Positions 9,764 through 41,237 of a stretch of DNA of 64,000 nucleotides are shown piece after piece. The stretch spans positions 124,001 through 188,000 of the IMG/VR virus record IMGVR_UViG_3300047476_002078. The stretch is one strand, 5' to 3'. Within the stretch, counting starts at the first letter, position 1, and each line of letters begins with the position of its first letter. The notes beneath the pieces were generated by a model. It did no database searches, was not told where the DNA came from, and saw nothing but the letters and a program-made list of their open reading frames with translations. A program made the translations under genes and the position numbers.

Positions 9764-9779
9764 GTGGAATCGGTATAGC
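9764..9779 (+). promoter_or_regulatory. conserved 16-bp promoter-like element
   Basis: GTGGAATCGGTATAGC; ATG at 9807 with GGAGG. Confidence 0.75.
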
Positions 9780-10046
9780 CTCCGAAAACTTATGGAGGAT
9801 ACCAAAATGGACTCAATCGAAAAAAACTGGACAGATAAAGCAAAAAACCTACTTTTAGGAAGAAAAATCGTTGCAGTAAGATATATGACGCAAAAGGAAG
9901 CCGATTCATTAGGATGGCATAGCCGTGGAGTAGTCATTCAACTAGACAATGGACTTTTGATATACCCTAGCCGAGACGACGAAGGAAACGACTCTGGAGC
10001 ATTATTTACCTCAGACGAAAATGAACCTACCCTACCAGTTCTCTAA

Positions 10047-10062
10047 GTGGATTCGGTAAAGC
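10047..10062 (+). promoter_or_regulatory. 16-bp promoter-like element (variant)
   Basis: GTGGATTCGGTAAAGC; real ATG probably 10089, not the GTG of the motif. Confidence 0.65.
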
Positions 10063-10372
10063 ACCTGAAAAAACAGGAGAACCTTCCCATGAAAGAAATA
10101 GACACCGCACTAAAAGCCTACATGAAAGAAAACAACGTGGATAAAAATGAACTTTTAGATGATATGGAAAATCAATCACACGGTTATAAATTAGCGATAG
10201 AAGCCTCTAACTATATCAAAATGTTCACAGGCACATCCTCTTTCTCCATGAAAGACTTGGAAACCCTACTAAAGAGATAAACACCAATACCCTAAAAGTA
10301 ACGCCGTGCGGTAGCAAAAATAAAACATATAGCGTATAACACCTATCTATCCTCAATAGAAAAGGAAACCAA

Positions 10373-10774
10373 ATGTTTTATTACAAAGATTCCGAAAAGC
10401 AGATGAAACTTGGGAAGTTAATCACTGAGCTTGAATCTATAAAAGATAAAACAAAAGAAGTTATATTCGACTTCGGTTACTTTATTCCAAACGACTTCAT
10501 AAGTTGGAGAGGTAGTTACGATTTACTTAGCCTAACCTATGTGCCTGTTTTTGAAGCATCCGAACGAACAACAGTTGAAATTCTTTTAAAGAAAGCTAAA
10601 GATTCTGTTGGTAAAGAGTTTTACGGTTATAAAGGGGGAGAATACGTCATGAGCGAATATTCACCTATATGGATTTCAAACTACGGACATTCAAATTCTA
10701 CAGGTCTGTTATCGGTAAGTGAGAAAAAATATAATGTTGTTTTGAATACTTTTTATTGCGAGTACGGCAGTTAA
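10373..10774 (+). CDS. conserved-type phage hypothetical protein
   Basis: SWRGSYDLL...GKEFYGYKGGEYVM pattern. Confidence 0.7.
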   Translation: MFYYKDSEKQMKLGKLITELESIKDKTKEVIFDFGYFIPNDFISWRGSYDLLSLTYVPVFEASERTTVEILLKKAKDSVGKEFYGYKGGEYVMSEYSPIWISNYGHSNSTGLLSVSEKKYNVVLNTFYCEYGS

Positions 10775-13429
10775 GGAAAGACAATGAGCTTGAATGAAGA
10801 CAACCTAGAATTTGAAAAATGGTTTGAACAGTACCGTAGCGGCGGTTCAATATACGACCACATGAAAACTGCATGGGATACCGCCTGCAAATACAAAAAT
10901 AAAGAACACTTCAATTTAATTGACGCAATGACTCAAACCAGTCAGAACAACGCTCAATTAAAAGAAATGCTTAAAGAAGAACAGGAAAAAATTAAGATCA
11001 TTATCGAAGCACTAGAATTTTATGCCGATGAAGCTCACCTCGAAATGAAATACTCTATCGGTAATGAAGGAAACTACCCCCTCGGAGAATACTGGAATGA
11101 TACCATGTGTTCCGAAAATGGAAGAAAAGCCAGAGAAGCTCTTGCCAAGGTATAAAGCATGAATAAACAAGATCAAGATAATTTTGACAAGTGGTGGCAC
11201 TCAACAGGATTCCCAAACGCTAAACCATCTGAAACATGGCAAGCAGCATTAGAGGATGAACGAAATAGACTAACCCCCATAATGAAAGGATTAGCCGATG
11301 TTAATGAAGCCTTATCCATGGAACTATACAAAAAACAAGAAAAAATTAAAGCCCTAATAAAGGCACTAGAATTTTATGCGGATGAAAACAATTGGCAAAG
11401 CATACAAGTTGGATACGGCTCAAGATCACAAATAAAACACTACGACCTCTTTGATACATCAACCGATGATACACAAAGATTAGTGGGAGGATTTAAAGCC
11501 AGAGAAATCCTCAAGGAATACAAAGAACATGGGAATGAAAACCCTCCAAGAATTTAAAGATGAAGTATTAAGCTACTTCGATGACAACATGAGAACTTAC
11601 TGCCCCCTATGTTACGGAGCATTAGCTATCCTAAACAGCCACAAATGCAATGAAGGATGGGAAATGTATTACAAAGCAGAAAACCTATCCTACGAACAAA
11701 AAGTAAAAGCCTGTGTGGGAGCATTAAGGGCAAAAAAGTTCTCAAAACGTAGAGGATTTCTGGAAAAAGCACACTTCTTCTATGGTCCAGAATGGGATAA
11801 GGATGAATAAATGGATATAAGAGAATTAATAGAAGGGAAATCTTTCGACCAATGGTATAAAAACGCCTGTTACGATACAAACGACGAACTCTTGAGACTT
11901 CGGATGTTAGAATGTTGGCAAGCCTCTGCTCAAGTGAAAGATAAAGAGTGGGAAACAAAAATGTGGAGATTACGGTACTTCACCTTCGCTCACGCATTAC
12001 ACTACTTTGAACAAAAAACAGGAGAAAAAAGAGAAGCTATCAAAAAAGTAAGATCAGTAAGTGACTTCGGATATGTTCTATGTGAAGTCATAACCGCATC
12101 AAACACCCATTATATCAGTGATGAGATGGAAGCAGGATTCCTGCTCGATTGGGCTGAAACACAAGGAAAAATATGTATTTAGTAACAACACCAACTCAAA
12201 TTGATACCTCTTTCGATGTGTATTATCACAAGATCAATCCCAAGGATAAAACATGGAAAAGCGTTTTAGAGGCTATTGAGAGAGAACTTGAGAGTCAGTA
12301 TTTTGCTAACGATGAAAAGCTAAATGGAATATCTTTCAATATCAGAATAACCAATAAGCTCCCCGATGATGTTTACATGGAAGAGGATTAGAGGAAATCG
12401 TTCTGTAACCGAAATGGAAACGTAGGCATTAAAACAAGTAAAAGAGAACCGTGGAATATAAGGTAGAAACCATGTGGAAAATAATCGCAACCATAATAAG
12501 AACAATCATACTAGGAATAAGCCTCATCATATTTACCCCATGGTGGATTGGACGCTTCATAGAATACCTAGTCAAAAACATCAACAATACATACGATAAA
12601 ACACTCCTAGTAAAAATAAGAACAGTCATACATAAATGGCTCAAAATCACTCAAAACCTTTACAAAAAAGAAGAATAAAATGGGAGCACCCGACAGAATC
12701 ACCATAAATACAAACAAATTTATCGGAATAGGTATAGGATTCGATACCTTCCCCTACACCATAACCATATACATAAACATACCATTCCTATGTATCCAAA
12801 TCGGATTAGGGAAACCATATACACAAAAGTAAAACCTTGCGGTAAAACATGAAAACAAATGACCAAAACTTCCTACTCGCCACTAAAGAAGATATGTTTA
12901 TCAAAATCTTATGGAGATTCTACCGCTTCAATCACGAAGAATTCTCAAACGAATGTCTCTACATATTAGATAAAACACCCCCAAACTTTATGGGAGTATA
13001 TTTTATATGAACAAAAAAGAACTAGCCAAAGAACTCTTCAAAGTAGAACTCAATATAGGGCAAAACAAAAACTCCCTACAACTATACATAGATAAGAAAG
13101 GTGAACTACATACCATCAAACGACTCAATACCTACTTGATAGAGGTAAGAACAAAAGATAAAGCAGGATGGGCTACAGGCAATATATCAAAGGTAAAGAA
13201 AGCACTCAATCTAACCTATATCACCACTATAAAGATATGAACAAAAATCACAAAAAGAAAATCAAAGAGTTTGATGAAAAATCTAAGAAAAGAAAAGACC
13301 TAAACCTATTAGCACGTATGTTCTATTTCTACCTTGTATATTCCTCTATAGGTATTTAAGGTCTTTTATATCCTTTATACCCTATTCTTCTTTTCTGTAT
13401 TCCCACAAGAGAAAGATAGAAATACCCAT

Positions 13430-13897
13430 ATAGGAACATATAAAGGGTAAAGACATGACATATATCAAGACTTCCATAAAAGAAAAGGAACCTGTGATAT
13501 AGCCATTCAGAACGAACACCCATAGGAACATATATGGGAAGTAATCAGACTGTGATCTGTGTGGGAGAAACCTAAAGAGATTTGAGGTAATCCTCACCCT
13601 CACCCGTAATAACATACTGCCTTGAAGCCTGTTTAATATCAGCCGTACCCTTATTAGCAAGCCCTAACTTCACAAGTACGTTAGCGTCTTTAATCTCAGC
13701 ACTATCCATTAAAAACCTTTCAAGCGGACCCTTCTCTAAAACTCGTAAAAGTTTTAACTGGGAAGGAGATAATTTAGTAGAAGATACCCTACGCTCTAAA
13801 TCCGCTATCTTTGACTTAATACTCATATAGAACCCCTTAATACAGTATAGAACATATAAAAGAAAAACAGGAGGGAAATACCCTATAGGAACATATA
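13430..13897. repeat. three dispersed 13-bp direct repeats ATAGGAACATATA
   Basis: Copies at 13430, 13522 and 13885, plus variant ATAGAACATATA near 13847. Confidence 0.8.
13572..13826 (-). CDS. small basic hypothetical protein, winged-helix-like
   Basis: 84 aa, RBS AGGGG; LSPSQLKLL...LVKLGL...YVITGEGEDYL pattern. Confidence 0.65.
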   Translation of the reverse strand: MSIKSKIADLERRVSSTKLSPSQLKLLRVLEKGPLERFLMDSAEIKDANVLVKLGLANKGTADIKQASRQYVITGEGEDYLKSL

Positions 13898-14778: not shown

Positions 14779-14805
14779 TAAAAAAGCCTCCCTAAGCGGA
14801 GGCTT
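14779..14805 (-). terminator. intrinsic terminator for the minus-strand gene 14833..15231
   Basis: AAGCCTCC-ctaagc-GGAGGCTT hairpin flanked by an A-run (U-tract on the minus strand). Confidence 0.7.
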
Positions 14806-14831
14806 GTTGGCAATCCTGCCTTTGGTTATCT

Positions 14832-14847
14832 TCTATACCGATTCCAC
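14832..14847 (-). promoter_or_regulatory. 16-bp promoter-like element (15/16)
   Basis: GTGGAATCGGTATAG forms the last codons and stop (VESV*) of the minus-strand ORF. Confidence 0.55.
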
Positions 14848-15231
14848 TATTTTTTCGTATCTGTATTTTTGGCTTTCTTCATTCCATCCAACTTTAAACT
14901 CTACTTGTATCATTAAGTTTCCATTTTCTTCCCACAAATAATAGGAGTAGTGTGTTTGTTGGGCTTCCTCAGAAAAATCTGGAATAATACGAACTTCTGT
15001 CCATTTTCCAGAGTTTTCTGGAGCAAAAGATTTCTCCATAAGTTTTCCGACTATATAAGACCCTAAACAATCTGCATCTAAAGTCGGGCTTCCTTCCTTA
15101 AAGTCTTTGACAAGTGCTCTGAGTTCTTGCCCTAGAGATTTAGGGTGTCCATCACTACGGCGGTACACTGTAGTTAAAATCTCTTCTGTTTTTTTGTCAC
15201 GGTAAATAACAATTTTAGCATCTGTTGACAT
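14833..15231 (-). CDS. conserved-type phage hypothetical protein
   Basis: Start re-assigned to MSTDAKIV (RBS GAGG, downstream of the motif at 15286); YRRSDGHP resembles the common YxHxDGYP phage family. Confidence 0.7.
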   Translation of the reverse strand: MSTDAKIVIYRDKKTEEILTTVYRRSDGHPKSLGQELRALVKDFKEGSPTLDADCLGSYIVGKLMEKSFAPENSGKWTEVRIIPDFSEEAQQTHYSYYLWEENGNLMIQVEFKVGWNEESQKYRYEKIVESV

Positions 15232-15285: not shown

Positions 15286-15301
15286 GCTATACCGATTCCA
15301 C
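15286..15301 (-). promoter_or_regulatory. 16-bp promoter-like element
   Basis: Exact copy on the minus strand. Confidence 0.75.
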
Positions 15302-15600: not shown

Positions 15601-15616
15601 GTGGAATCGGTATAGC
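15601..15616 (+). promoter_or_regulatory. 16-bp promoter-like element
   Basis: Exact copy; ATG at 15643. Confidence 0.8.
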
Positions 15617-15949
15617 ACTCGAAACGATAACGGGAGGAACCCATGTTAAAGACAATCAGAAGAGACAAGTTAAAAAGGGATATAGCGAAGGGCTTGTATG
15701 TTTGTAAGTGTAACTACCACTTTTCAGACGACGCTAGGTACGACTACATTTCGGATGAGAATACCGCCTATAAACAGATTAACCTCATTTCTGAGGGCAA
15801 TAAAAGGGACTACGACAAGATCAACTTGAGGGATGATGATTTCTCTAGTCAGGTTGGTAGGGCGTGGGAAAATGCGGATGGGAGCGTGACTTTGGTTATC
15901 CACTCGAATCTTTCTTATGACTTTAAAAAGGTATAAATAAAAATTGATT

Positions 15950-15977
15950 GCCTCCCGTTTTGGGAGGCTTTTTATTT
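15950..15977 (+). terminator. intrinsic terminator
   Basis: GCCTCCC-gtttt-GGGAGGC followed by TTTTTATTT. Confidence 0.85.
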
Positions 15978-15980
15978 GGG

Positions 15981-15996
15981 GTGGAATCGGTATAGC
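15981..15996 (+). promoter_or_regulatory. 16-bp promoter-like element
   Basis: Exact copy; no ORF before the next copy at 16084. Confidence 0.75.
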
Positions 15997-16083
15997 GGTT
16001 GAGTGCGAAAAGGGAACGCTGACCTGACTCTACCATGGTAGGGGGAGGTACATACAGGGAGGGGGGAGGAGAAATGGAATTGG

Positions 16084-16099
16084 GTGGAATCGGTATAGC
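16084..16099 (+). promoter_or_regulatory. 16-bp promoter-like element
   Basis: Exact copy; ATG at 16129. Confidence 0.8.
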
Positions 16100-16666
16100 A
16101 TCTGAAACCAACAACGGAGGAGATTCCAATGAAACTTACCCCTGCCCAAAAGAAACTTGAAAACTTCCTTAAAGAGAAGGGAGGAACTGTTTATGGTCCA
16201 GAAGTGAACAGGATGTTTGATAAGCGTGTGGTTGACTCAATGGTGTCTAAAGGTGTGGTAGAAAGCGTAGGTCGCTCTTACCTCAGACAGGACGATATGG
16301 AGATGGTTTACTACCACGAATACCGCCTTGTGGAAAAGACAGCGGAATTGAAGGCACGTAAAGAGGCTTTGTTGGCGGAACTTAAAAAGGTCGAAGAGGA
16401 ATTGGCAGCTTAATATAACGGAGGGGAGGCATGAAAGACTATAGAGTGTGGCTACGTTCCGTACCGAGCTTTTACGCTCAATATGATGGGTATGTGGATG
16501 TTTGGGCGGAGGATGAGGAGGAAGCGGTGGAGAAGGCTTTAAGAAAGATTCAGCGTGAATCCTTTCCTGATCGTGGTAGAGGGATGTGGAAAGTGGAGAA
16601 AGTAGAGCGGATGTGATACACATGCGTAGCACATGTGGCACACATCTTGCAGAAAAAAGAGTTAGA

Positions 16667-16682
16667 GTGGAATCGGTATAGC
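16667..16682 (+). promoter_or_regulatory. 16-bp promoter-like element
   Basis: Exact copy; no ORF before the next copy at 16758. Confidence 0.75.
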
Positions 16683-16757
16683 CTTCGAGACGGCGAAAGG
16701 GCAACGCAGATACCCGACTCTACCATGGTAGGGGGAGGAGCTACCGCTCGGAGTACG

Positions 16758-16773
16758 GTGGAATCGGTATAGC
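16758..16773 (+). promoter_or_regulatory. 16-bp promoter-like element
   Basis: Exact copy; ATG at 16799. Confidence 0.8.
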
Positions 16774-16798
16774 CTCTGAGAGAAAAACGGAGGTTGTC

Positions 16799-17182
16799 AT
16801 GAAAAAGAAAAGCAAACAATTAAAGAACAAAGATATGAATAATGAGGTGTATGCCTTACGTCGTAGGGTAATGAACTTCATTTATGAGGCTAGGGAGTTG
16901 GCGGAGATGCCGAGGGTTGAGGTAAGGATTACCGATAACCACGAAAGGATTTTGGGGCAGGCTCGGATGAGTGGGAACATCATTTGGATTACTGAAAGGG
17001 CTGTGACTTATTCCGACTTTGACTTGAGAACGATTGTGTTCCATGAGTTACTTCATGCGGTGTTTGGGGTGGAGCATGATGAGGGCTGTAAACTAATGAA
17101 GGCGATACATGAGCCTTTAACCAAATCGGAAGTACATAAACTGTTTAAGGGTTGGGTTAAGAAATCTAGTTTAGCTGCTTAG
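16799..17182 (+). CDS. SprT-like zinc metallopeptidase domain protein
   Basis: ILGQA...IWI...TIVFHELLHAVFG (HExxH) followed by H...C..M. Confidence 0.7.
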   Translation: MKKKSKQLKNKDMNNEVYALRRRVMNFIYEARELAEMPRVEVRITDNHERILGQARMSGNIIWITERAVTYSDFDLRTIVFHELLHAVFGVEHDEGCKLMKAIHEPLTKSEVHKLFKGWVKKSSLAA

Positions 17183-17198
17183 GTGGAATCGGTATAGC
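17183..17198 (+). promoter_or_regulatory. 16-bp promoter-like element
   Basis: Exact copy immediately after the TAG of 16799..17182. Confidence 0.8.
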
Positions 17199-17938
17199 CA
17201 GTGAAAGAAACTGGAGGGTTTATGAAATCTCAAAAAGACAAAGACTTTGTGGAATACGTGATGAGCTTCTATGGAGCAGGAGGATTGTATCAGGAATTTT
17301 TTGGTACAGGTGTTTCTGAATCGGAAGTTAAGAAGGCTTTGAGAATCCGTAAGAAGAACAAGAAGTTTGCGTTTGACGGAGATTCCATGGATAGGGAGAT
17401 TGTTCGAGATATTATGTTGTATCAGCGTGGCGACAGAAATCTTGAATGTAACATGAAACCTTACTTTGGGGCTTAATATGAATGACTTTGATTTTCATTA
17501 TCTATATATCAGTTCAAAAACTATCAAGCCGTTGAAAGACTTCGGCGTGGAGCGTGAGCGTATCCACGGTAGGGTAGAGTATCGGCGTGGTCAGTATCCT
17601 AAGAAATTCTATGAGACTTCCATCCATGGCACGGTATCGGAGTTGGAAGAGAAAATGTCGGAAGCTAGGAAGCATGGGCTTTTGGCGGTAATGAAATACC
17701 ACTGTGCGGATTAGGAAGGTTGTATGAAATTGGATGTAAATTTTGTTGGAAGGCGTAGTGGTGCTTTGGGAGTTACCTACGAGATTAGGGAGACTTTGGA
17801 AGTACCAGATAACATCACTTTTGAAGAGTTTCGTATGAAACTTTACGAAGTTGGTTATGAGTGTATCAATCTTGACGTGCGAGATGTTTACGTATCAGGA
17901 ACGAACGACCGTCATTTTTATGATAGGGCAAGAGCATA

Positions 17939-17954
17939 GTGGAATCGGTATAGC
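17939..17954 (+). promoter_or_regulatory. 16-bp promoter-like element
   Basis: Exact copy sharing its G with the TAG of 17724..17939; next ATG at 17980. Confidence 0.8.
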
Positions 17955-18813
17955 CTTCGAGGAAACTTTGGAGGCTTTCATGAGTTACCGAAACAGTTAC
18001 AAAAATCTAAAACATATCCCGACTAAAAAACTTCAGGAAATCCTTGATTCCAACCATTGTACTGGAATCGACGGTGCGGATTACGAGCCTGTGAAAGAAG
18101 AGTTGGAACATATTTTGTGGGAACGTCAGAACCGTCAAGCCGAGGCAGAGATGAAGCGGATGGAAAAAGAGTGGGAAGCCTACGAACAATATTTAGAAGT
18201 AGCATAGGAGAATATATGGAAAAGTTACGAAACTTACATGCCAAGTACGTTGTTGAGATGACTGAAAGAAACACAATGGCTCAGAAGAAACTTGAGGCTT
18301 TGCACAAAGAGGATTGGGAAACGGCTCAACATTTTGTGGGGTTACAATGTTATCACCAAGGGCGTGCGGAAGTTTTTGCGGAACTGCTCAAAGAGATGGG
18401 AGTTGTTGTAAACGTGGGTTCCCAAATCACAGAACTTTTTAACGAAGGTATGAGACAATAGACCGTAGGTTGTACTACAATTTACGGTATGTTTGGAGCC
18501 ATTGAGATAAAAGACAACTTTGCAAAATTTTCTACCACTTCATTGGAGGGGTTAGACTTTTTAAAGGGCAGGAATGATGTTCCTGTTTATAAAACCGTAA
18601 AAGTTCCCCGACCGACACACCCAACTTCAGAGATTTATGAGATACGTAATGGAGAGTTCTGGGTTCAGACTTCGGAAGTTTTGTATTACAAGGTTGAGAT
18701 TGACTTAGAGAGCTTTGAGGATTCCTTTTTCAAACAGGTTTTCATGGGTTTTTGTAAATTTGTTATTCCTGTATTTTTTAATTGGGTAGTACAACGTCGG
18801 ATTAGAAGACTTT

Positions 18814-19371
18814 ATGTTTGGTTCAACTCGCATTTGCACAACAAACAAACCCATTTGTAAGGATTTATACCCTCAAATAGAAAAAGGTGTGTTGGAATTG
18901 GTTCTCACTTTCATTAGAGCCGGTTTTTTCACTATTTCTTCTTGTGAAGGTCATCGAAAGCTTGAAAATCAGTGGAGATATGTGACTTTGGCGTTCCCGA
19001 AGCGGTGGATGGCAGAGAGATTTTTGCGTTTGGAGCCGCCTTCTGGAGTGTTTTTCGAGGAAACTTTGTGGTCAGACTCTTATTACATGAGTTCGGAGCT
19101 TCCAGATGGTGTGTATAAGATGCGTGGGGAGCATTTTAGTAGCAAGACAGAGGGTTTTCAGGTGAGTGAGAGGTGTAAAAAGCTCTTTAAGGTCGATTCT
19201 AATGATTGGGTTTTGGTACAGGTGTCGGTATATCCGATTACGGAGCGTCCAACTAACCTTTATGAGGTGTGGATGTCAGCACTTTGCCGTCATTTTCCTT
19301 CTTTTTTCTATAAATTCTTTGAATATCAAAGCACGAAACGTCTTATTAAGTGGTTAAAAGCCTTGGAATAA
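18814..19371 (+). CDS. hypothetical protein
   Basis: 185 aa with TISSCEGH motif. Confidence 0.65.
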   Translation: MFGSTRICTTNKPICKDLYPQIEKGVLELVLTFIRAGFFTISSCEGHRKLENQWRYVTLAFPKRWMAERFLRLEPPSGVFFEETLWSDSYYMSSELPDGVYKMRGEHFSSKTEGFQVSERCKKLFKVDSNDWVLVQVSVYPITERPTNLYEVWMSALCRHFPSFFYKFFEYQSTKRLIKWLKALE

Positions 19372-19374
19372 AAA

Positions 19375-19424
19375 CTACAGCCGTCATTGAAGGTTTCTGG
19401 GAGGAAATTTAGTGACGGCTGTAG
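19375..19424. terminator. 14-bp inverted repeat, possible terminator hairpin
   Basis: CTACAGCCGTCATT ... AGTGACGGCTGTAG directly after a stop codon. Confidence 0.55.
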
Positions 19425-19640
19425 CTTTATGATACGGAGGAATGGTTCCGATCAATTATGGCTAGGCTACATTCTAGTGAAAATGCGTAAAGTCATTCAA
19501 TAAAATTAAGCCTTTTCCTTTTTAACCGCAAATTTCCTTTAAAATTCAACATATTAGCGTCAACAGGAAGCTTCCCGGCTTTGTTCCCGGTTTGTATCCC
19601 AAAGTTAGTCCGAAAAAATTCCCCAAAATCGGAATAACGG

Positions 19641-19656
19641 GTGGAATCGGTATAGC
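19641..19656 (+). promoter_or_regulatory. 16-bp promoter-like element
   Basis: Exact copy; ATG at 19682. Confidence 0.8.
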
Positions 19657-19978
19657 AGGTGAAAGGAAAACGGAGGTTTTTATGGAAACAATGTTCAGAA
19701 TGTCGGTGTTTGTTGTGGGAGTCAAAAAGAGATGTCGCAAAGTTGATCGACATCATTTGAATGGAGGCTACATGCCCTACAACGATGGAGTTTTTGACAG
19801 ATGCGAAGTCGAGCAGAAGGCAAGAGATATGGTTGATACCAACATGAAGTCAGCAAACAAGATTCATGTAAAACTTACGAAAGTCGAGTTCAAAGAAGAC
19901 AACGGAATCACAATCGAGAGCTTTCTAATGTTCGACGATGCTCACGTAGCGTTCGATATAGCTGCCTAAACATCCGAA

Positions 19979-19994
19979 GTGGAATCGGTATAGC
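19979..19994 (+). promoter_or_regulatory. 16-bp promoter-like element
   Basis: Exact copy; ATG at 20014. Confidence 0.8.
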
Positions 19995-20013
19995 AGGCGA
20001 GAGGGAGAAACTT

Positions 20014-20622
20014 ATGAAAACAATGATGATTATGAAGACGACAATTGTAATAGTGCTCATGCTTAATCTTGTAAGCTGTGCAAGTAAAAAGACATTCGGA
20101 GATGGAGCCTATGAGACTGCGGATTATTCCGAACAACCTACCCACTGGGAAGACAGGTTCAATGAGTGGGATAGCCGAGAGCTTATCAAAGGTTCACTGG
20201 AATCTTTCGGAGTGTGTGGTTTACGGAAAAATCACATCTATATGATTGCAAACTTTGAGAACCAGACTTCAGAAGAACTTGATATGGCTCAACTGAAGCG
20301 AGAAATGATCGACCAGATTCAGCTTCGAGGTTTATCGGTTGTGGATAAAGATTCCCGACCTGATATTCATCAAGAGCATGAATACAATGCGACAGGATAC
20401 GTGAACCCTACCAAAGCCGCCGTAAAAGGTAAGCAGGAAGGAGTGGAGATTCTTTTGAGAGTGGCAGTATCTTCTAAAACTCAGGTATCCCCAGATCGAA
20501 ATGAAAAGACTGTCAGATACAAACTATCAGTACAAGGAGTTGATATGGAATCAGCACTTGTGAAATGTACAGGGTTAGCGGAAGTTAAAAAACGCTACCA
20601 ACGTGTACGTGAGGCTTTTTAG
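20014..20622 (+). CDS. lipoprotein, LpoB (PBP activator)/CsgG-like fold
   Basis: Signal peptide with lipobox LVSC; NFENQTSEELD and YKLSVQGVDMES segments resemble the LpoB family. Confidence 0.6.
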   Translation: MKTMMIMKTTIVIVLMLNLVSCASKKTFGDGAYETADYSEQPTHWEDRFNEWDSRELIKGSLESFGVCGLRKNHIYMIANFENQTSEELDMAQLKREMIDQIQLRGLSVVDKDSRPDIHQEHEYNATGYVNPTKAAVKGKQEGVEILLRVAVSSKTQVSPDRNEKTVRYKLSVQGVDMESALVKCTGLAEVKKRYQRVREAF

Positions 20623-20812
20623 CATGGAAGGTAAATATGAACTACGAACAACTAAGTGAGTTAGCAAGATTATACGCAAAAGACGATTGTTTCAGAAGCG
20701 AGATTTTAAAAAGGGTAGCGAAACTACCGAAAGAGCAAAGAGAGACTTTTGAAACTATGAAGAACCTCTACTGCATTTTACAAAATTCAGGAGAGTTAAA
20801 GGAAAGAAAGAA

Positions 20813-21487
20813 ATGCGAACAGTAATAGCCCTTATCTTTATGTTAGTCAGCACTCAAACCCATGCTGAAAGAAAAGTTGAATGGGTTAGAGTTTTCAACG
20901 AAGCTGAAAGTGTTACCGATCTTGAAAGGTCTGCGGTTTTAATGGAGCAAGACGATTACATCCGCCACAGAGAAGACTTGAAAGGTCACTTGGATAAAGA
21001 CCACGGTACGAATCCTCCTAGCGACTTGGAGCGAGAATACGTGTACTGGAAAATCGCTCACTCTTATCTGTTCTTTTACGAGAGATACCATGAAAAAGAA
21101 AATCTGATTAAGATGAATATCTACATGCGTAAACTTCTTGAGATTCCAAACCGTCATTTGTTTAGCGAGTATCTGATTGCAAGGATACAGGAGCACAATG
21201 GGGAGAGTTACTCTTCAAAAGTGAAAGTACCGAGAGGGACAACTTTTTGGGAGTTTGACAGATTTCAGGATACGCATGGATTTTTTCTCGATGACGTAAG
21301 TAAAGAGTACAAAGAGATTGCGGATAAGAAGCGTATGGGATTTTTCAAGACGGTATGTTGGGTTTTAATGATTTGTGTTGGGGGAGCAAAGTTTGACAAT
21401 GAAGTTATCTTGAAAGATTTGCACAAACCTTTTTATGTCACGATTCATACAAAAGACGGTTACTACAAACCAGAGGAGGTAAAATGA
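20813..21487 (+). CDS. putative secreted hypothetical protein
   Basis: Signal-peptide-like MRTVIALIFMLVSTQTHA. Confidence 0.65.
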   Translation: MRTVIALIFMLVSTQTHAERKVEWVRVFNEAESVTDLERSAVLMEQDDYIRHREDLKGHLDKDHGTNPPSDLEREYVYWKIAHSYLFFYERYHEKENLIKMNIYMRKLLEIPNRHLFSEYLIARIQEHNGESYSSKVKVPRGTTFWEFDRFQDTHGFFLDDVSKEYKEIADKKRMGFFKTVCWVLMICVGGAKFDNEVILKDLHKPFYVTIHTKDGYYKPEEVK

Positions 21488-24122: not shown

Positions 24123-24138
24123 GCTATACCGAATCCAC
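24123..24138 (-). promoter_or_regulatory. 16-bp promoter-like element (variant)
   Basis: GTGGATTCGGTATAGC on the minus strand; ATG at 24096. Confidence 0.75.
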
Positions 24139-24156: not shown

Positions 24157-24172
24157 GTGGAATCGGTATAGC
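24157..24172 (+). promoter_or_regulatory. 16-bp promoter-like element
   Basis: Exact copy, back-to-back with 24123; ATG at 24195. Confidence 0.8.
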
Positions 24173-24637: not shown

Positions 24638-24653
24638 GTGGAATCGGTATAAC
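24638..24653 (+). promoter_or_regulatory. 16-bp promoter-like element (variant)
   Basis: GTGGAATCGGTATAAC; ATG at 24680. Confidence 0.7.
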
Positions 24654-26119: not shown

Positions 26120-26135
26120 GTGGAAGCGGTATCAA
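26120..26135 (+). promoter_or_regulatory. degenerate 16-bp promoter-like element
   Basis: GTGGAAGCGGTATCAA; ATG at 26158. Confidence 0.5.
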
Positions 26136-27417: not shown

Positions 27418-27512
27418 TACATTTTGTCTTGGTCGGCGGTGTATTAAGAGCCACTTTCAAACGAAGTTCACTTAATACGTTCTACTGGTAACGCACGTAT
27501 TTTTTGAAGTCA

Positions 27513-27546
27513 GAAAAGGCACTCAAAGTAGTGCCTTTTCTTTTTT
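27513..27546. terminator. bidirectional intrinsic terminator
   Basis: GAAAAGGCACT-caaagt-AGTGCCTTTTC plus T-run, between convergent genes. Confidence 0.8.
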
Positions 27547-27819: not shown

Positions 27820-27835
27820 GTGGAATCGGTATAGC
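27820..27835 (+). promoter_or_regulatory. 16-bp promoter-like element
   Basis: Exact copy; ATG at 27857. Confidence 0.8.
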
Positions 27836-28389: not shown

Positions 28390-28405
28390 GTGGAATCGGT
28401 ATAGC
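28390..28405 (+). promoter_or_regulatory. 16-bp promoter-like element
   Basis: Exact copy; ATG at 28431. Confidence 0.8.
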
Positions 28406-28721: not shown

Positions 28722-28737
28722 GTGGAATCGGTATAGC
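28722..28737 (+). promoter_or_regulatory. 16-bp promoter-like element
   Basis: Exact copy; ATG at 28761. Confidence 0.8.
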
Positions 28738-28760
28738 AACCGAAACCAAGGGGAAGAGAT

Positions 28761-29081: not shown

Positions 29082-29084
29082 ACA

Positions 29085-29100
29085 GTGGAATCGGTATAGC
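29085..29100 (+). promoter_or_regulatory. 16-bp promoter-like element
   Basis: Exact copy; likely ATG at 29121 (GGAGG RBS). Confidence 0.8.
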
Positions 29101-29120
29101 GAGTGAAACAGGAGGACGGT

Positions 29121-29450
29121 ATGGGAAAATTAAAAGAATTTTACTTGGAACTTGAAGAACAAATGTTTCACAACGGTGAAACCATGGAAGACGAAGAAAT
29201 GGTGGAATACGCCACAGTCATCATGACCGACTATGCACTCGCTATGCAAAAACCTCTCTCACGGCACTTAACAGAAGCCGAACTTCTTAAAGCCGTGCGA
29301 GTAGCGAAAGATGAAACCGAAATGGACGATAACCTATACGAAAAACTTTTTAACTACTATGTGGGAACAGGTGAACTCCCATGCACAGCCGCAGGGGAAG
29401 ACCTATACGCTTGGATAACCGAACAACTAACAAACGAACTCATTGGATAA
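29121..29450 (+). CDS. acidic hypothetical protein
   Basis: Start re-assigned from GTG 29103 using RBS position. Confidence 0.65.
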   Translation: MGKLKEFYLELEEQMFHNGETMEDEEMVEYATVIMTDYALAMQKPLSRHLTEAELLKAVRVAKDETEMDDNLYEKLFNYYVGTGELPCTAAGEDLYAWITEQLTNELIG

Positions 29451-29465
29451 AACAGGAGACAAAAC

Positions 29466-29825
29466 ATGAAAACACTAATCTTGATCTTTACACTCGGAAC
29501 CCTAGTATCATGCTCTAGCACAACGAAAGTAAAAACTTTCAAGGAAGCTATCGCAGAAAATGATACACTCGAAAGTGGAATCTATAACCGCCCGAACGGA
29601 GAAAATGTACAAGTACACGTACAATCTCTCAAGGCACGTATCGAAGAACTTGAGAAAGAAAAACTAGACGCTATCAAGGAAGCGAACTACTACAAGCGAA
29701 CAAACGAAGAACTCAAGTATGAGAACATGACTCTAAGAGTACGCTCAAACATGGAACTCGAAAAACAACCGAAAGTGACAGGATTCGACAAGGAAGCAAA
29801 CCCTATCACAGAAAAAGCGGAGTAA
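29466..29825 (+). CDS. putative lipoprotein with coiled coil
   Basis: MKTLILIFTLGTLVSC lipobox. Confidence 0.7.
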   Translation: MKTLILIFTLGTLVSCSSTTKVKTFKEAIAENDTLESGIYNRPNGENVQVHVQSLKARIEELEKEKLDAIKEANYYKRTNEELKYENMTLRVRSNMELEKQPKVTGFDKEANPITEKAE

Positions 29826-29832
29826 AACTACT

Positions 29833-30267
29833 ATGAGAACGAAAGTAGAAACAACCGTAACAATAGATGATATAAGTCTATTCGATATAGAGGAACTCAA
29901 AAAAGTTCTTGCAAAACACGGAATAGATTTTGAAAGAGCAGTAAACATCCAAGAAGACGGAGAAATGGAACTCACTAAGGAACTTGATGGGAAGGAAATC
30001 ATAGTAGAGGGACAAGCGACCGAAGGATTTTCTGGAAGCTATTGGGACCCTCCAGAAGACCCAGAAATGGATATATCGAAAGTTTCAAAGATAACATTCG
30101 CAGATAAGGAAATTGCAATCGACGAAGCCTTCACAGAAAAAACTTGGGAATGGATAACCGAACAGTTATGGGAAAATAAAAGTGACCAATACGAAGCCTA
30201 CTTGGAAGAAAAAGCCGAACACGATAGAGAAATGGCATGGGAGCGAAGACTAGAAAATGATGAGTAA
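29833..30267 (+). CDS. acidic hypothetical protein
   Basis: 144 aa, GSYWDPPEDPE motif. Confidence 0.7.
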   Translation: MRTKVETTVTIDDISLFDIEELKKVLAKHGIDFERAVNIQEDGEMELTKELDGKEIIVEGQATEGFSGSYWDPPEDPEMDISKVSKITFADKEIAIDEAFTEKTWEWITEQLWENKSDQYEAYLEEKAEHDREMAWERRLENDE

Positions 30268-30317
30268 CCGCTCAAAAACAATAACGTAAACGAGCGGATT
30301 TTTTATAGGAGAACTTT

Positions 30318-30386
30318 ATGGCTAAGAAAGCAACAAAGAAAGTAGCAAAGAAAAAAGTAGCAAAGAAAGCGAAAGCAAAGAAGTAA
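30318..30386 (+). CDS. 22-aa Lys/Ala-rich histone-H1-like micropeptide (not in ORF track)
   Basis: MAKKATKKVAKKKVAKKAKAKK*; AGGAGA RBS; followed by a terminator. Confidence 0.7.
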   Translation: MAKKATKKVAKKKVAKKAKAKK

Positions 30387-30400
30387 CATGCTACCGCACT

Positions 30401-30428
30401 AAAGCAGGGGTGAAAAACTCCTGCTTTT
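30401..30428 (+). terminator. intrinsic terminator
   Basis: AAAGCAGGGG-tgaaaaa-CTCCTGCTTT then T. Confidence 0.75.
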
Positions 30429-30456
30429 GTACATTCAGACACTTACACCCTCCAGA

Positions 30457-30472
30457 GTGGAATCGGTATAGC
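30457..30472 (+). promoter_or_regulatory. 16-bp promoter-like element
   Basis: Exact copy; ATG at 30501. Confidence 0.8.
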
Positions 30473-30500: not shown

Positions 30501-30875
30501 ATGGCGTACATATCAACAGAAGAAATCAAAGAAATGAGAGATGCCCTTAAAAATGAATTTAATGGCAAAAATAACCGTAAACTGAAACTATCTGTAACTA
30601 GACGACACTACTCAACCGTAGTCGTTTCCATCATGGAAGGGGACTTGGAATTCAAAGAAGGTTACATCCAATTAAACCCATACTACCTCAAAGAACATTG
30701 GAAAGATCATCCCGAAGAACTTGCGGTACTTCAAAAAATCTCTGAAATCGTCAACGGAATCAAAAAAGAAGAAAATCGAAACGCAGGCGACCCATACGCA
30801 GACTATAGCGACTATAACTACTACTTCGACCTACACGTAGGAAAATGGGATAAACCTTACAAAAAAGTAGCCTAG
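30501..30875 (+). CDS. conserved-type phage early protein (LPD29-like, tentative)
   Basis: MAYIS...IKEMRDALK...KLSV...HYSTVVVSIMEG...DYFDxHVGKWDKPY pattern recalled from polyvalent-protein-associated domains. Confidence 0.5.
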   Translation: MAYISTEEIKEMRDALKNEFNGKNNRKLKLSVTRRHYSTVVVSIMEGDLEFKEGYIQLNPYYLKEHWKDHPEELAVLQKISEIVNGIKKEENRNAGDPYADYSDYNYYFDLHVGKWDKPYKKVA

Positions 30876-30890
30876 TGGAAGCGGTATAGC
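30875..30890 (+). promoter_or_regulatory. 16-bp promoter-like element (variant)
   Basis: GTGGAAGCGGTATAGC overlapping the upstream TAG. Confidence 0.7.
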
Positions 30891-30906
30891 CGACGAGGAG
30901 AAACCA

Positions 30907-31272
30907 ATGAAAGAACTATTCCAATTCAAAGAGTTTGATTTATCAGGTAAAGGAAATACACTCGAAATCGGCTTAAAACGAGTCCTGTTTCTAATCGCAC
31001 TCTTTGTCATACCAATGCTCTTAGGAATCCTATCAGTCGTGTTTTTAAACCTTCCTATCGTGGGATATGTCGTGGGAGCTTTAATCCTTTGCTACCTACC
31101 GCTTTACTTCAAAAAAGGTAAGCCTACCGTAAAAATAAACGATAACTTCCAAGTAGCCTACACCGCACCGAAAGGCGTAAACAGAGAACTTCTGACTAAA
31201 TCAATTTCAAGTATTATCGTCTTCTGTATCTTGTTCACTTTTGGCTTTTATGCCCTGTACGACCGATTCTAA
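30907..31272 (+). CDS. membrane protein, about 3 TM segments
   Basis: Three long hydrophobic stretches. Confidence 0.75.
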   Translation: MKELFQFKEFDLSGKGNTLEIGLKRVLFLIALFVIPMLLGILSVVFLNLPIVGYVVGALILCYLPLYFKKGKPTVKINDNFQVAYTAPKGVNRELLTKSISSIIVFCILFTFGFYALYDRF

Positions 31273-31274
31273 AA

Positions 31275-31290
31275 GTGGAATCGGTATAGC
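31275..31290 (+). promoter_or_regulatory. 16-bp promoter-like element
   Basis: Exact copy; ATG at 31309. Confidence 0.8.
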
Positions 31291-31308
31291 AAGTGAAAAG
31301 GGGAAAAT

Positions 31309-31707
31309 ATGGAACAGCCAGTATATCAAAGACTTTTAGACCACGTAACCGAACTCGCTTCCACAGGTCTGTTCGGAGTCGTGGCAGTATTTATTAGTTT
31401 TGCAGTTATCGCTCTGATCTTTTATACCGCTATCGGTATGCCTCTATCGTTCTTATATCACCAAATAAAAAATCTCGTAGCCCTTTATTCACACTCCAAA
31501 GAATATGAATTGGAAGTGCATCCGTACACTCACTCAATACTGAATAACACTTGTCCAGAATTAAAAGAACTTGCACGTCTCAAAAAACTTGGTAAAACTT
31601 CTGAAATGAAAGATATTTTAAGAGATATGATAAGCACCGTAAAATCGAAAGAAACTAACAAAGAAGTGAGAACAGAAATTGTAAAATCACTACAATCATT
31701 AGTATGA
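31309..31707 (+). CDS. membrane protein
   Basis: Hydrophobic segment at residues about 18-50. Confidence 0.7.
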   Translation: MEQPVYQRLLDHVTELASTGLFGVVAVFISFAVIALIFYTAIGMPLSFLYHQIKNLVALYSHSKEYELEVHPYTHSILNNTCPELKELARLKKLGKTSEMKDILRDMISTVKSKETNKEVRTEIVKSLQSLV

Positions 31708-40112: not shown

Positions 40113-40125
40113 GATAGAATAGTTG

Positions 40126-40198
40126 ACACATTGCATAAATTAAAAATTTGAATCTACCCTAAAAAAACGGATTTACTATAAAGATTTATGCAATGTGT
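40126..40198. repeat. 15-bp perfect inverted repeat ACACATTGCATAAAT / ATTTATGCAATGTGT
   Basis: Arms at 40126-40140 and 40184-40198. Confidence 0.9.
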
Positions 40199-40376
40199 AA
40201 AATAAAAATTCGCTATTTCCCTAAAAGAACGGATTCACTCATTTACATCACGACGAACTTGCAATGGAAAACACGACGAACTCGATATACCAACACGACG
40301 CACACGAAAGAAAAAAATAAAAACAAATTACGGTAAAAAATTGACAGTAACTTGAAATCAACTCAAACTTATAAAC

Positions 40377-41069
40377 ATGAGTTACAAAATTAAGTACGGC
40401 GAAAACGGCGAAATAGAATGTGTGTCAGTCCCTCTAAAAAATTCTGAAATTGCGTTTTGTAAAGAGTTCGCACAGAAATGCACAGCGACCAACCAAGACC
40501 AATACAGATTGAGAAATCAGCACGACCCTGAAATGATTCAGCTTCAAATTTACTTTGGAAAAATAGCCGAGGTTGCGGTTTGCCGTTTTTTACGGAGTCA
40601 AGGCTTGCAAGTTTCCGCACCTGACTTTGGAATATACTCTAAAGAAGCTAAAAGCTGGGCTAGGGACATGGTTTGCATCAAGGACGGCGTTACATACCCA
40701 ATCCATTCAAAATGCACTACGCTCGAAACTAAGAGGCTCTACACGCTGTCTTGGATTGTACAATTCGGAGGCATAGGGCGAGGACACTTAGATAAGGAAA
40801 TCTTTGAGGCAAAAAGTGGCTTGATGGCTTGTTGTTGCCCGAATGAAGAAGACGAGAATGTAATTGATATATACGGCTTTATTCCTGTGTCTGATCTGCA
40901 CGAACACCATTTACTCAAGATGCCCGGAAAAAATGCTCTTAAAGGCACGAAGAGGGCTTTATACTATTGCGATGTGAGAGTAGTAGAGCATAATGAAGAA
41001 TTAAATTTACGGTGGAATTTTGTAACACCAAAAATTCCTATGACCAATCCTCCTGAAATCAGCATTTAA
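40377..41069 (+). CDS. hypothetical protein, possible PD-(D/E)XK-like fold
   Basis: GKIAEVAV...PDF...D...IHSK pattern. Confidence 0.5.
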   Translation: MSYKIKYGENGEIECVSVPLKNSEIAFCKEFAQKCTATNQDQYRLRNQHDPEMIQLQIYFGKIAEVAVCRFLRSQGLQVSAPDFGIYSKEAKSWARDMVCIKDGVTYPIHSKCTTLETKRLYTLSWIVQFGGIGRGHLDKEIFEAKSGLMACCCPNEEDENVIDIYGFIPVSDLHEHHLLKMPGKNALKGTKRALYYCDVRVVEHNEELNLRWNFVTPKIPMTNPPEISI

Positions 41070-41221
41070 AATAAATGTTGACTGGTAGCGTTAGATTAAG
41101 CTAATATAGAGGCATAGTTTTTCACCCGATGGAATCAAGTATTCAAGTAGGGGGAATGGAAAATTGTGTCAAAACCACTTCTTTTTTATTCCCAAATACA
41201 TTCAAATACTTAGCCCTTCGA

Positions 41222-41237
41222 GTGGATTCGGTATAGC
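41222..41237 (+). promoter_or_regulatory. 16-bp promoter-like element (variant)
   Basis: GTGGATTCGGTATAGC; ATG at 41309. Confidence 0.65.

What the first reader, a model, noticed from the sequence alone, without database searches (positions are those of the whole stretch)
9764..41237. 25 copies of a 16-bp element GTGGAATCGGTATAGC: candidate phage-specific promoter class
Seen: 18 exact and 7 variant copies (9764, 10047, 14832-, 15286-, 15601, 15981, 16084, 16667, 16758, 17183, 17939, 19641, 19979, 24123-, 24157, 24638, 26120, 27820, 28390, 28722, 29085, 30457, 30875, 31275, 41222). They are oriented with the downstream gene, mostly 18-30 nt before the start. Most are followed by NNN(Y)GA(A/G) and then an RBS. 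No conserved -35 box is apparent. Inference: TATAGC acts as a -10-like box with an invariant upstream extension and a start near the conserved GA. It would be read by a phage sigma factor/RNAP or by host RNAP plus a phage activator, defining an early regulon.
Basis: partly seen in the sequence, partly recalled or inferred. Interest (0 to 1): 0.7.

Follow-up and report, generated by a model that had tools for sequence, protein, structure and literature searches.

The report
Phage-specific promoter-like motif, reader unknown
A 356-kb uncultivated jumbo phage carries 36 near-identical copies of a ~24-bp signal just upstream of genes; it is most likely a phage-specific promoter, but no phage RNA polymerase or complete sigma factor that could read it was found.

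Summary
GTGGAATCGGTATAGC occurs 18 times exactly and 6 times with 1-2 mismatches in the window (0.19 expected by chance). The 25th claimed copy (26120) has 4 mismatches. The window is part of a 355,874-bp jumbo phage with terminal repeats. That genome holds 36 copies with at most 2 mismatches. Every copy points the same way as the gene downstream, and 30 lie 15-29 nt before an ATG that has its own GGAGG ribosome-binding site.

The conserved block is about 24-25 bp: R-GTGGAATCGGTATAGC-MNNYGARA. There is no -35 box. Copies head the main strand blocks, form two back-to-back divergent pairs 14 and 18 bp apart, and one sits 12 nt after a strong terminator. This anatomy fits a promoter better than an RNA-level signal.

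A 484-kb relative (ligase 57% identical) has six copies of the core GGATTCGGTATA in the same position. Its flanks differ, so TATAGC as such is not conserved. More distant relatives lack the motif.

No T7-like or multisubunit RNA polymerase and no sigma region 2 were found. The only candidates are a tandem sigma-region-4 protein and an adjacent NusG-like gene. No usable RNA data exist, so start sites and timing are untested.

Verdict: a new member of the phage-specific single-block promoter kind, with an unidentified reader.

The parts
9764..9779 (+). motif copy, exact; ATG 27 nt downstream
10047..10062 (+). motif copy, 2 mismatches (GTGGATTCGGTAAAGC); ATG 26 nt downstream
14832..14847 (-). motif copy, 1 mismatch (ends TATAGA). 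It overlaps the end of gene 14833-15231(-) and is followed by terminator 14805-14784(-). Either an orphan or a tiny RNA unit.
15286..15301 (-). motif copy, exact; heads the minus-strand gene 15231-14833 (54 nt to the start)
15601..15616 (+). motif copy, exact; heads the plus-strand block 15643-22686; ATG 26 nt downstream
15950..15968 (+). intrinsic terminator (8-bp stem with 6 GC pairs, then a T run), 12 nt before motif 15981
15981..15996 (+). motif copy, exact; followed by a conserved non-coding unit of about 60 nt, not by an ORF
15997..16083 (+). non-coding unit 1 (ends ...GACTCTACCATGGTAGGGGGAGG), duplicated at 16683-16757
   Evidence: no Rfam match
16084..16099 (+). motif copy, exact; ATG 29 nt downstream
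16667..16682 (+). motif copy, exact; followed by non-coding unit 2
16758..16773 (+). motif copy, exact; ATG 25 nt downstream
17183..17198 (+). motif copy, exact; ATG 23 nt downstream
17939..17954 (+). motif copy, exact; ATG 25 nt downstream
19641..19656 (+). motif copy, exact; ATG at 19682, 25 nt downstream
19979..19994 (+). motif copy, exact; ATG 19 nt downstream (LpoB-like protein)
24123..24138 (-). motif copy, 1 mismatch; heads the minus-strand block 24096-22681; back-to-back with 24157(+), 18 bp apart
24157..24172 (+). motif copy, exact; heads the plus-strand block 24195-27417; ATG 22 nt downstream
24638..24653 (+). motif copy, 1 mismatch (TATAAC); ATG 26 nt downstream (AAA ATPase)
26120..26135 (+). 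degenerate copy, 4 mismatches (GTGGAAGCGGTATCAA); ATG 22 nt downstream (GATase_6)
27512..27541 (+). intrinsic terminator (12-bp stem) that closes the block begun at 24157
27820..27835 (+). motif copy, exact; heads the block 27857-30267; ATG 21 nt downstream
28390..28405 (+). motif copy, exact; ATG 25 nt downstream; lost through a 6-bp deletion in one strain variant (L093)
28722..28737 (+). motif copy, exact; ATG 23 nt downstream
29085..29100 (+). motif copy, exact; ATG 20 nt downstream
30457..30472 (+). motif copy, exact; heads the block 30501-31707; ATG 28 nt downstream
30875..30890 (+). motif copy, 1 mismatch (GTGGAAGC...); ATG at 30907, 16 nt downstream
31275..31290 (+). motif copy, exact; ATG 18 nt downstream
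41222..41237 (+). motif copy, 1 mismatch (GTGGATTC...), with ATACTT 11 nt upstream; ATG 71 nt downstream

Best explanation
The element is a phage-specific, single-block promoter with no -35 box. Its core is GGAWTCGGTATA. In this phage the core is extended to R-GTGGAATCGGTATAGC-MNNYGARA. I infer that transcription starts about 7 nt after TATA, at the conserved G or A that follows a pyrimidine. That would give leaders of roughly 10-25 nt carrying a GGAGG ribosome-binding site.

Each copy would fire one short unit. Most units read through into the next, so a row of small accessory genes plus a ligase, a helicase, an AAA ATPase and an amidoligase gets nested transcripts. No phage RNA polymerase is recognisable. 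I therefore infer that the host core RNA polymerase does the work, directed by a phage-encoded specificity factor not yet identified. The factor could be a minimal or sigma-like HTH protein, or an activator that takes over the host sigma.

Shown: the motif, its statistics, its orientation, its position and its conservation. Inferred: that it acts on DNA, where transcription starts, and who reads it.
For: - Statistics: 18 exact copies against 0 expected; 36 copies genome-wide with at most 2 mismatches, and a sharp fall-off beyond that.
- Orientation and position: all 36 copies are co-oriented with the next gene; 30 of 36 lie 15-29 nt before a start codon that has its own separate ribosome-binding site.
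- Limited conservation: it is confined to about 24-25 contiguous bp and the flanks are unrelated, so the copies are not duplications of whole regions.
- Unit starts: the first gene of the main strand blocks in window 15-32 kb has a copy (15286-, 15601, 24123-, 24157, 27820, 30457). So does the lone antisense ligase gene at genome 48362.
- Divergent pairs: two back-to-back pairs, 18 and 14 bp apart, fill their intergenic regions and leave no room for any other promoter.
- Terminator: a strong terminator ends 12 nt before copy 15981. Sigma-70-like sites are fewer than in shuffles across 9-29 kb (30 against 46).
- Strain variants: at 88-99% identity there are 0 substitutions in 295 motif positions against 3.2% elsewhere, plus one 6-bp deletion.
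- Relative: a 484-kb relative (ligase 57%, sigma-4 protein 74% identical) has 6 copies of GGATTCGGTATA/GGATTCGGTACA in about 31 kb, all 6-21 nt before co-oriented ATGs apart from one copy (L268:8689) with no adjacent start codon. One heads a block after an opposite-strand gene. In another, the A of the ATG lies exactly 7 nt after TACA.
- No own polymerase: PF00940 found nothing, no DxDGD motif, and Pfam or PHROG screens of nearly all ORFs of 300 aa or more found none.
Against: - No transcript 5' ends are available. The one 'RNA' run that holds the phage looks like DNA, and its contigs do not begin at the motif.
- No reader has been identified. There is no sigma region 2. The tandem sigma-4 protein is conserved, with similar recognition helices, in distant relatives that lack the motif.
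- TATAGC and GGTATA are both poor matches to the sigma-70 -10 hexamer.
- One copy before nearly every small gene, with no terminators between them, is equally what an RNA-processing or translation signal would look like.
- Sixteen invariant positions (about 33 bits) far exceed what is needed to mark sites in a genome of this size. This could reflect a second, overlapping function.
Confidence: 0.7

Rival explanations
1. The element works at the RNA level, as a 5'-leader signal. It would be transcribed as part of long polycistronic RNAs and bound or cut there by a sequence-specific phage protein (processing site, translational operator or enhancer). This is similar in spirit to mycobacteriophage start-associated sequences or T4 RegA/RegB targets.
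For: There is one copy before almost every small gene, at a tight distance to the start codon, strictly on the sense strand, with no terminators between most units. Cluster K mycobacteriophages carry a comparable asymmetric 13-bp repeat before many non-structural genes, thought to act in translation (PMC3203893).
Against: At the two back-to-back pairs and after terminator 15950-15968, no upstream promoter could supply the RNA. The motif is separated from a normal GGAGG site rather than containing it. It shows no hairpin and no evident complementarity to rRNA. Two copies precede non-coding units, not ORFs. The distance to the ATG varies from 15 to 132 nt in this phage, and from 6 to 21 nt in the relative.
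Confidence: 0.12
2. The element is the promoter of an unrecognised phage-encoded RNA polymerase, either virion-borne or early-made. This would explain its T7-like length and near-invariance.
For: The block is contiguous, about 24 bp, has a sharp family boundary and conserved bases around the putative start, as in T7-type promoters. Several large proteins (1246, 1168, 872, 716 and 682 aa) have no family assignment.
Against: PF00940 found nothing. No T7-type motif A/B/C pattern occurs in any protein of 300 aa or more. No DxDGD motif occurs in any ORF of 100 aa or more. One of the large unknown proteins resembles the virion-type DUF4815 (a lead only).
Confidence: 0.1
3. The element is an ops-like recruitment or pause site for the phage's NusG paralogue. 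It would lie in the leader of each unit and load an antitermination factor onto RNA polymerase that started elsewhere.
For: The phage encodes a NusG-like protein (NGN+KOW) at genome 187868-188539. The motif contains CGGTA, as I recall the RfaH ops element does (from memory, not tested). The copies lie in leaders on the sense strand.
Against: This needs a promoter upstream of every copy, and there is no room for one at the back-to-back pairs or after the terminator. The NusG-like gene is conserved in relatives (G001, G002) in which no motif copy was found. Thirty-six copies, one per small gene, is unlike the one-per-operon pattern of ops.
Confidence: 0.04
4. The element is a sigma-54-type promoter. 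The GG at motif positions 3-4 and the GC at positions 15-16 have exactly the -24/-12 spacing.
For: GG-N10-GC spacing is present in all 34 copies that keep GC. An AAA+ ATPase is encoded in the region.
Against: In the relative the GC is not conserved (GT, CT, GA, TA, AC) while the core is. A start 12 nt after the C would fall inside or beyond the ribosome-binding site of the short-leader copies. The AAA protein matched the general AAA family, not Sigma54_activat.
Confidence: 0.02

Closest known systems
Single-block promoters read by phage-encoded sigma factors (phiEco32 TAATGTATA; phage 7-11 TGTGATGTTATA; PMC4331800)
   Same: One short contiguous element in the -10 region that ends in TATA. No -35 box. 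It is specific to the phage and its close kin, sits upstream of phage genes, and differs between related phages in its flanks.
   Different: Those phages encode a recognisable sigma-70-family (ECF-like) sigma factor. Here no region 2 was found. The element here is longer (12-bp core, 16-24 bp conserved) and far less degenerate.
T7-type single-subunit RNAP promoters (from general knowledge: about 23 bp, -17 to +6, TATA next to the start)
   Same: A contiguous, nearly invariant block of about 24 bp containing TATA. Conserved bases around the likely start. Many copies, each before a gene with a short leader, and read-through between units.
   Different: No T7-like polymerase gene was detected. 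TATA lies about 7 nt, not 1 nt, before the most likely start. In the relative the base after TATA is G, C, T or A.
T4 late and middle promoters, and the 'minimal sigma' and gp33 of jumbo phages without their own RNAP (PMC7824862)
   Same: A large phage without its own polymerase that must redirect host RNAP using small HTH proteins. Here a sliding clamp, a clamp loader and a sigma-4-type HTH protein are encoded side by side. ADP-ribosyltransferase-type (PARP-domain) genes are also present.
   Different: The motif bears no resemblance to TATAAATA or to the MotA box (both from memory). The genes it drives are not structural or late genes. No homology to gp55, gp33, MotA or AsiA was tested or found.
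Start-associated sequences of Cluster K mycobacteriophages (PMC3203893)
   Same: An asymmetric, highly conserved repeat on one strand only, before many non-structural genes of unrelated families, and confined to a phage cluster.
   Different: SAS lies 3-7 bp from the start codon and contains the Shine-Dalgarno sequence. Here the motif lies 15-29 nt away, upstream of a separate ribosome-binding site. It also heads strand blocks and divergent pairs.

Membership tests
T7-type ssRNAP promoter | Contiguous, highly conserved block of about 20-25 bp spanning the start site | tested here: met
   The logo shows conservation from -1 to +24 of the motif frame and nothing beyond it
T7-type ssRNAP promoter | Cognate single-subunit RNAP encoded by the phage | tested here: not met
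   PF00940 gave no match in the six-frame genome search (the control genomes hold no such gene, so sensitivity is unproven). No motif A/B/C pattern in proteins of 300 aa or more
T7-type ssRNAP promoter | Transcription starts at a fixed base inside the block | not testable with these tools
   No true RNA data: run X1 is probably DNA
Sigma-70-type bipartite promoter | -35 hexamer 16-18 bp upstream of a TAnnnT -10 hexamer | tested here: not met
   No information content upstream of position -1. TATAGC lacks the final T. Sigma-70-like sites are depleted in the region
Sigma-54 promoter | Invariant GG (-24) and GC (-12), 10 bp apart | tested here: not met
   Met within this phage, but the GC is not kept in the relative that shares the core. 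The start geometry also clashes with the ribosome-binding sites
Phage-sigma single-block promoter (phiEco32 / 7-11 type) | Single -10-region element, no -35, over-represented upstream of phage genes | tested here: met
   comparison with PMC4331800
Phage-sigma single-block promoter (phiEco32 / 7-11 type) | Phage-encoded sigma-70-family factor with region 2 | tested here: not met
   PF04542 gave no candidate. TIGR02937 at E<=1 hit only region-4 segments. The 210-aa protein is two sigma-4-like HTH domains
RfaH/NusG-paralogue ops site | Lies in a transcribed leader downstream of a separate promoter | tested here: not met
   There is no room for another promoter at pairs 24123-/24157+ and genome 206233-/206263+, nor between terminator 15950-15968 and copy 15981
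Mycobacteriophage SAS-like translation signal | Occupies the ribosome-binding-site position, 3-7 bp from the start codon | tested here: not met
   The motif ends 15-29 nt before the ATG and a separate GGAGG lies between them; definition from PMC3203893

The most novel reading that the evidence does not exclude
The motif is read by a transcription-specificity system of a kind not yet described. One option is a sigma-region-2-less factor, for example the clade's tandem sigma-4 protein acting as a two-HTH 'minimal sigma' on the direct half-sites GGAAT/GGTAT. The other is a polymerase with no detectable similarity to known RNAPs. Either way, host or phage enzyme would start at a 12-bp core with no -35 and no canonical -10, in a lineage of huge phages that is widespread in metagenomes.
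Probability: 0.12. Interest if true: 0.8.

Novelty: new member of a known kind. Interest (0 to 1): 0.5.

Why it matters
Huge phages known only from metagenomes have essentially no mapped regulatory signals. This element gives a clean, testable handle. It marks about 36 transcription units, defines a regulon of accessory and replication-associated genes (ligase, helicase, AAA ATPase, amidoligase and many small ORFs), and is shared with at least one 484-kb relative.

The genome has no recognisable RNA polymerase and no complete sigma factor. Finding the protein that reads a 12-24-bp near-invariant block would show how this lineage takes over host transcription. A promoter this short and specific, together with its reader, could also serve as an orthogonal expression part. 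If it turns out to be an ordinary phage-factor-dependent promoter, the result is still useful annotation, but not surprising.

Tried and rejected
- **RNA evidence.** The only 'RNA' run holding the sequence (X1, wastewater) is flagged as probably DNA. Its contigs neither start nor stop at the motif, so it gives no start-site information.
- **Known phages.** Megablast of 23 kb against GenBank phages found nothing. The DNA polymerase is at most 29% identical to any phage record.
- **Collection scans with the exact 16-mer.** IMG/VR gave only single chance hits. Metagenomes gave chance hits plus short contigs of strain variants. A scan with the 14-mer TAGGATTCGGTATA was swamped by chance hits.
- **Relatives found through the DNA polymerase or the AAA ATPase.** None were found.
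- **Other relatives.** Those at about 40% identity for the sigma-4 protein (G003-G005), and G001/G002, have no copies. G005 has no analogous high-copy motif. Two ligase-bearing contigs (L269, L380) also lack it.
- **The whole 484-kb record** could not be searched.
- **Polymerase and sigma hunt.** PF00940, PF04542, TIGR02937, a DxDGD scan, T7 motif scans, Pfam/PHROG screens of nearly all ORFs of 300 aa or more and of 44 window ORFs, PDB sequence searches of 5 proteins, and Atlas searches of 2 proteins were run. The 980-aa ORF at genome 287549-290491 was not scanned. Only the tandem sigma-4 protein and the NusG-like protein emerged.
- **Fold of the sigma-4 protein.** It matches ECF sigma region 4 domain by domain and nothing more.
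- **Complex prediction of that protein with motif DNA** was not folded. This is no evidence either way.
- **A shared late-promoter motif** between this phage and G001 was not found by k-mer enrichment.
- **Sigma-54 reading.** Rejected (see rival explanations).
- **Literature.** A search for the sequence found nothing relevant.

Full report
**Observation**

None is expected by chance. Allowing up to 3 mismatches gives 24 sites against 0.19 expected. The 25th listed copy (26120) reads GTGGAAGCGGTATCAA, which is 4 mismatches, but it still lies 22 nt before an ATG with a ribosome-binding site.

The window is bases 124001-188000 of a 355,874-bp virus record with direct terminal repeats. Across that whole genome there are 36 copies with at most 2 mismatches: 31 on the plus strand and 5 on the minus strand. 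Twenty-eight of them lie between 116.5 and 165.2 kb. The family has a sharp edge: one further site has 3 mismatches and 20 have 4, and only 26120 among these lies near a gene start.

**Anatomy**

I made a rough gene call of 551 genes covering 91% of the genome. Against it, every copy points the same way as the next gene. Thirty of 36 copies end 15-29 nt before a start codon that has its own GGAGG-type ribosome-binding site. Three of the apparent exceptions come from my gene caller picking the wrong start (19641 and 30875 both have an ATG 16-25 nt downstream) or from a longer leader (15286-, 54 nt).

Two copies (15981, 16667) are followed not by an ORF but by a duplicated non-coding unit of about 60 nt. 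It has no Rfam match. One copy (14832-) overlaps a stop codon and is followed by a terminator.

The logo shows conservation from one base before the 16-mer (R) to eight bases after it (M-N-N-Y-G-A-R-A), about 24-25 bp in all. There is no information upstream, so no -35 box, and the flanks are unrelated. The copies are therefore not remnants of duplicated regions.

**Why a promoter**

- **Unit starts.** The first gene of the main strand blocks between 15 and 32 kb of the window carries a copy: 15286-, 15601, 24123-, 24157, 27820 and 30457. Two short minus-strand ORFs of doubtful status (27545-27754, 30272-30442) have none. The DNA ligase gene, which sits alone on the minus strand among plus-strand genes, has an exact copy 25 nt before its ATG.
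- **Back-to-back pairs.** Two divergent pairs (24123-/24157+, and genome 206233-/206263+) have their upstream edges 18 and 14 bp apart. The motifs and leaders fill the whole intergenic space. A signal that acted only on RNA would have no promoter to feed it.
- **Terminator.** A strong intrinsic terminator (15950-15968) ends 12 nt before copy 15981. Another (27512-27541) closes the block that begins at 24157.
- **Sigma-70-like sites.** They are fewer than in shuffled sequence across 9-29 kb (30 against 46 ± 7). Elsewhere the genome does hold sigma-70-like sites, for example TTGCTA-N17-TATAAT directly before a tRNA. This suggests a host with ordinary housekeeping promoters and makes the motif a separate class.

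**Likely start site (inferred)**

Position 20 of the motif frame is always a pyrimidine, and position 21 is G in 29 of 36 copies. Position 21 lies 7 nt after the last A of TATA. In the relative described below, one copy has the A of its ATG exactly 7 nt after TACA, which would give a leaderless message. This is inference only.

**Conservation**

Short metagenome contigs of strain variants (88-99% identical) show no substitution in 295 aligned motif positions, against 3.2% elsewhere. One copy is destroyed by a 6-bp deletion.

A more distant relative is a 483,791-bp ENA contig. Its ligase is 57% identical to this phage's and its sigma-4 protein 74%. It carries six copies of GGATTCGGTATA (one reads GGATTCGGTACA) in about 31 kb. 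All are on the plus strand. Five lie 6-21 nt before co-oriented start codons, and the sixth (L268:8689) has no start codon within about 200 nt. One copy heads a block that follows an opposite-strand gene.

The flanks that are invariant in this phage (GT before the core, GC after it) are not conserved in the relative. The shared core is GGAWTCGGTATA. TATAGC as such is therefore not the conserved hexamer, and the sigma-54-like GG-N10-GC spacing I had noticed is an accident of this phage.

Relatives at about 40% identity for the sigma-4 protein (three records of 286-363 kb) have no copies. Nor do the 155-kb fragment G001, which covers only the replication and structural half, and the smaller fragment G002. 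One of the three larger records (350 kb, 60% GC) was read in full and has no comparable high-copy motif.

**Who reads it**

I found no T7-like polymerase. PF00940 gave no match in six frames, although its control genomes cannot prove sensitivity. No T7 motif A/B/C pattern occurs in any protein of 300 aa or more. No DxDGD motif occurs in any ORF of 100 aa or more.

Pfam or PHROG screens covered nearly all ORFs of 300 aa or more; the 980-aa ORF at genome 287549-290491 was not scanned. They returned helicases, DNA polymerase, ribonucleotide reductase, ligases, terminase, portal, tail proteins, two PARP-domain proteins, radical-SAM enzymes and the like, but no RNA polymerase. The grouped screen lists only the best 25 of 61 families, so it is not exhaustive. 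Sigma region 2 is absent.

The only transcription-type genes lie just beyond the right end of the window:
- a NusG-like protein (NGN+KOW) at genome 187868-188539;
- next to it, a 210-aa protein made of two sigma-region-4-like HTH domains. Its predicted fold (pLDDT 76) matches ECF sigma region 4 domain by domain.

The sigma-4 family is present in at least 198 IMG/VR loci from phages of up to 536 kb. Its recognition helices are nearly unchanged in relatives that lack the motif. I therefore rate it only as a candidate; it may instead serve late genes.

Published comparative work notes that jumbo phages without their own polymerase rely on minimal HTH sigma-like factors and gp33-type proteins to recruit host enzyme (PMC7824862). 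In architecture, the nearest experimentally known promoters are the single-block elements ending in TATA that the sigma factors of phiEco32 and phage 7-11 read (PMC4331800).

**Rivals**

- **RNA-level leader signal.** This is the serious rival, because almost every small gene has a copy. The closest precedent is the start-associated sequences of Cluster K mycobacteriophages (PMC3203893). It fails at the back-to-back pairs and at the terminator-adjacent copy, and the motif is separate from the ribosome-binding site.
- **Cryptic phage polymerase.** This would explain the T7-like length and invariance, but nothing supports it.
- **ops-like site for the NusG paralogue.** This needs upstream promoters that are not there.
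- **Sigma-54.** Contradicted by the relative.

**Verdict**

The promoter reading is well supported by position and comparison, but unproven without 5'-end data. The specific claims about TATAGC, an early regulon and a phage sigma or RNAP are not established. I file it as a new member of the known kind 'phage-specific single-block promoter'. Its reader is unidentified, and that is the interesting part.

Noticed in passing
genome-wide, e.g. window 14279, 32671, 32949, 34292, 39122, 40328; genome 22808, 77638, 118139, 273151: A second over-represented element, the palindrome tTTTAC(C/G)GTAAAa. There are 69 copies of the 8-bp core, and 42 of the 7-bp core lie 8-70 nt before a start codon. The logo is symmetric, and copies often sit between or over sigma-70-like hexamers. 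It looks like the operator of a dimeric regulator. Two copies sit just upstream of the motif copy at genome 77690.
   Followed up: partly
window 15997-16083 and 16683-16757: Two copies of a non-coding unit of about 60 nt (ends ...GACTCTACCATGGTAGGGGGAGG; contains the 12-nt palindrome CTACCATGGTAG). Each is driven by its own motif copy and followed by the next copy. No Rfam match. Possibly a small phage RNA.
   Followed up: partly
window 14784-14847 (-): A motif variant (…TATAGA) overlaps the stop codon of the upstream gene and is followed 27 nt later by a good terminator. It would make an RNA of about 45 nt, or it is an orphan copy.
   Followed up: no
genome 19005, 48362, 98569 and window 41222: Four outlying copies (before the helicase, the ligase and two other genes) share a WTTACTT-like box (ATACTT at window 41222) 10-11 nt upstream of the motif. 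If transcription starts at position 21, that places the box at about -36 to -31. This may be a sub-class with an extra upstream element.
   Followed up: no
window 8000-42000 versus its flanks: The motif-rich stretch is 36-44% GC. The flanks, and most of the genome as far as I saw, are 31-33% GC. This suggests a compositionally distinct accessory module.
   Followed up: no
genome 187868-189178 (just right of the window; locus L164:787-2097): A NusG-like gene and a 210-aa tandem sigma-region-4 protein lie next to the clamp and clamp-loader genes. The sigma-4 family occurs in at least 198 IMG/VR loci from phages of up to 536 kb.
   Followed up: yes
genome 39196-41187 and 86873-89050 (outside the window): Two large proteins carry a C-terminal PARP-type ADP-ribosyltransferase domain (Pfam E about 1e-23). 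They may modify host proteins.
   Followed up: partly
genome about 347.6-355.8 kb (outside the window): Long collagen-like GXY repeat genes dominate the k-mer spectrum. They are shared at about 70% DNA identity with relative G001.
   Followed up: no
window 28390 in locus L093: One strain variant has a 6-bp deletion inside the motif (GTGGA------ATAGC), while the gene and its ribosome-binding site are kept. This is a natural promoter knock-out that could be exploited in metatranscriptomes.
   Followed up: no
window 20014-20622, 24680-25825, 26158-26889; genome 206306-207244: Genes driven by the motif include an LpoB-like lipoprotein (which hints at a Gram-negative host), an AAA ATPase, a GATase_6 protein and an Amidoligase_2 protein. 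Elsewhere the genome holds 4 radical-SAM genes, 2 C5 methylases, IMPDH/GMP reductase and a RelA_SpoT-domain protein.
   Followed up: partly
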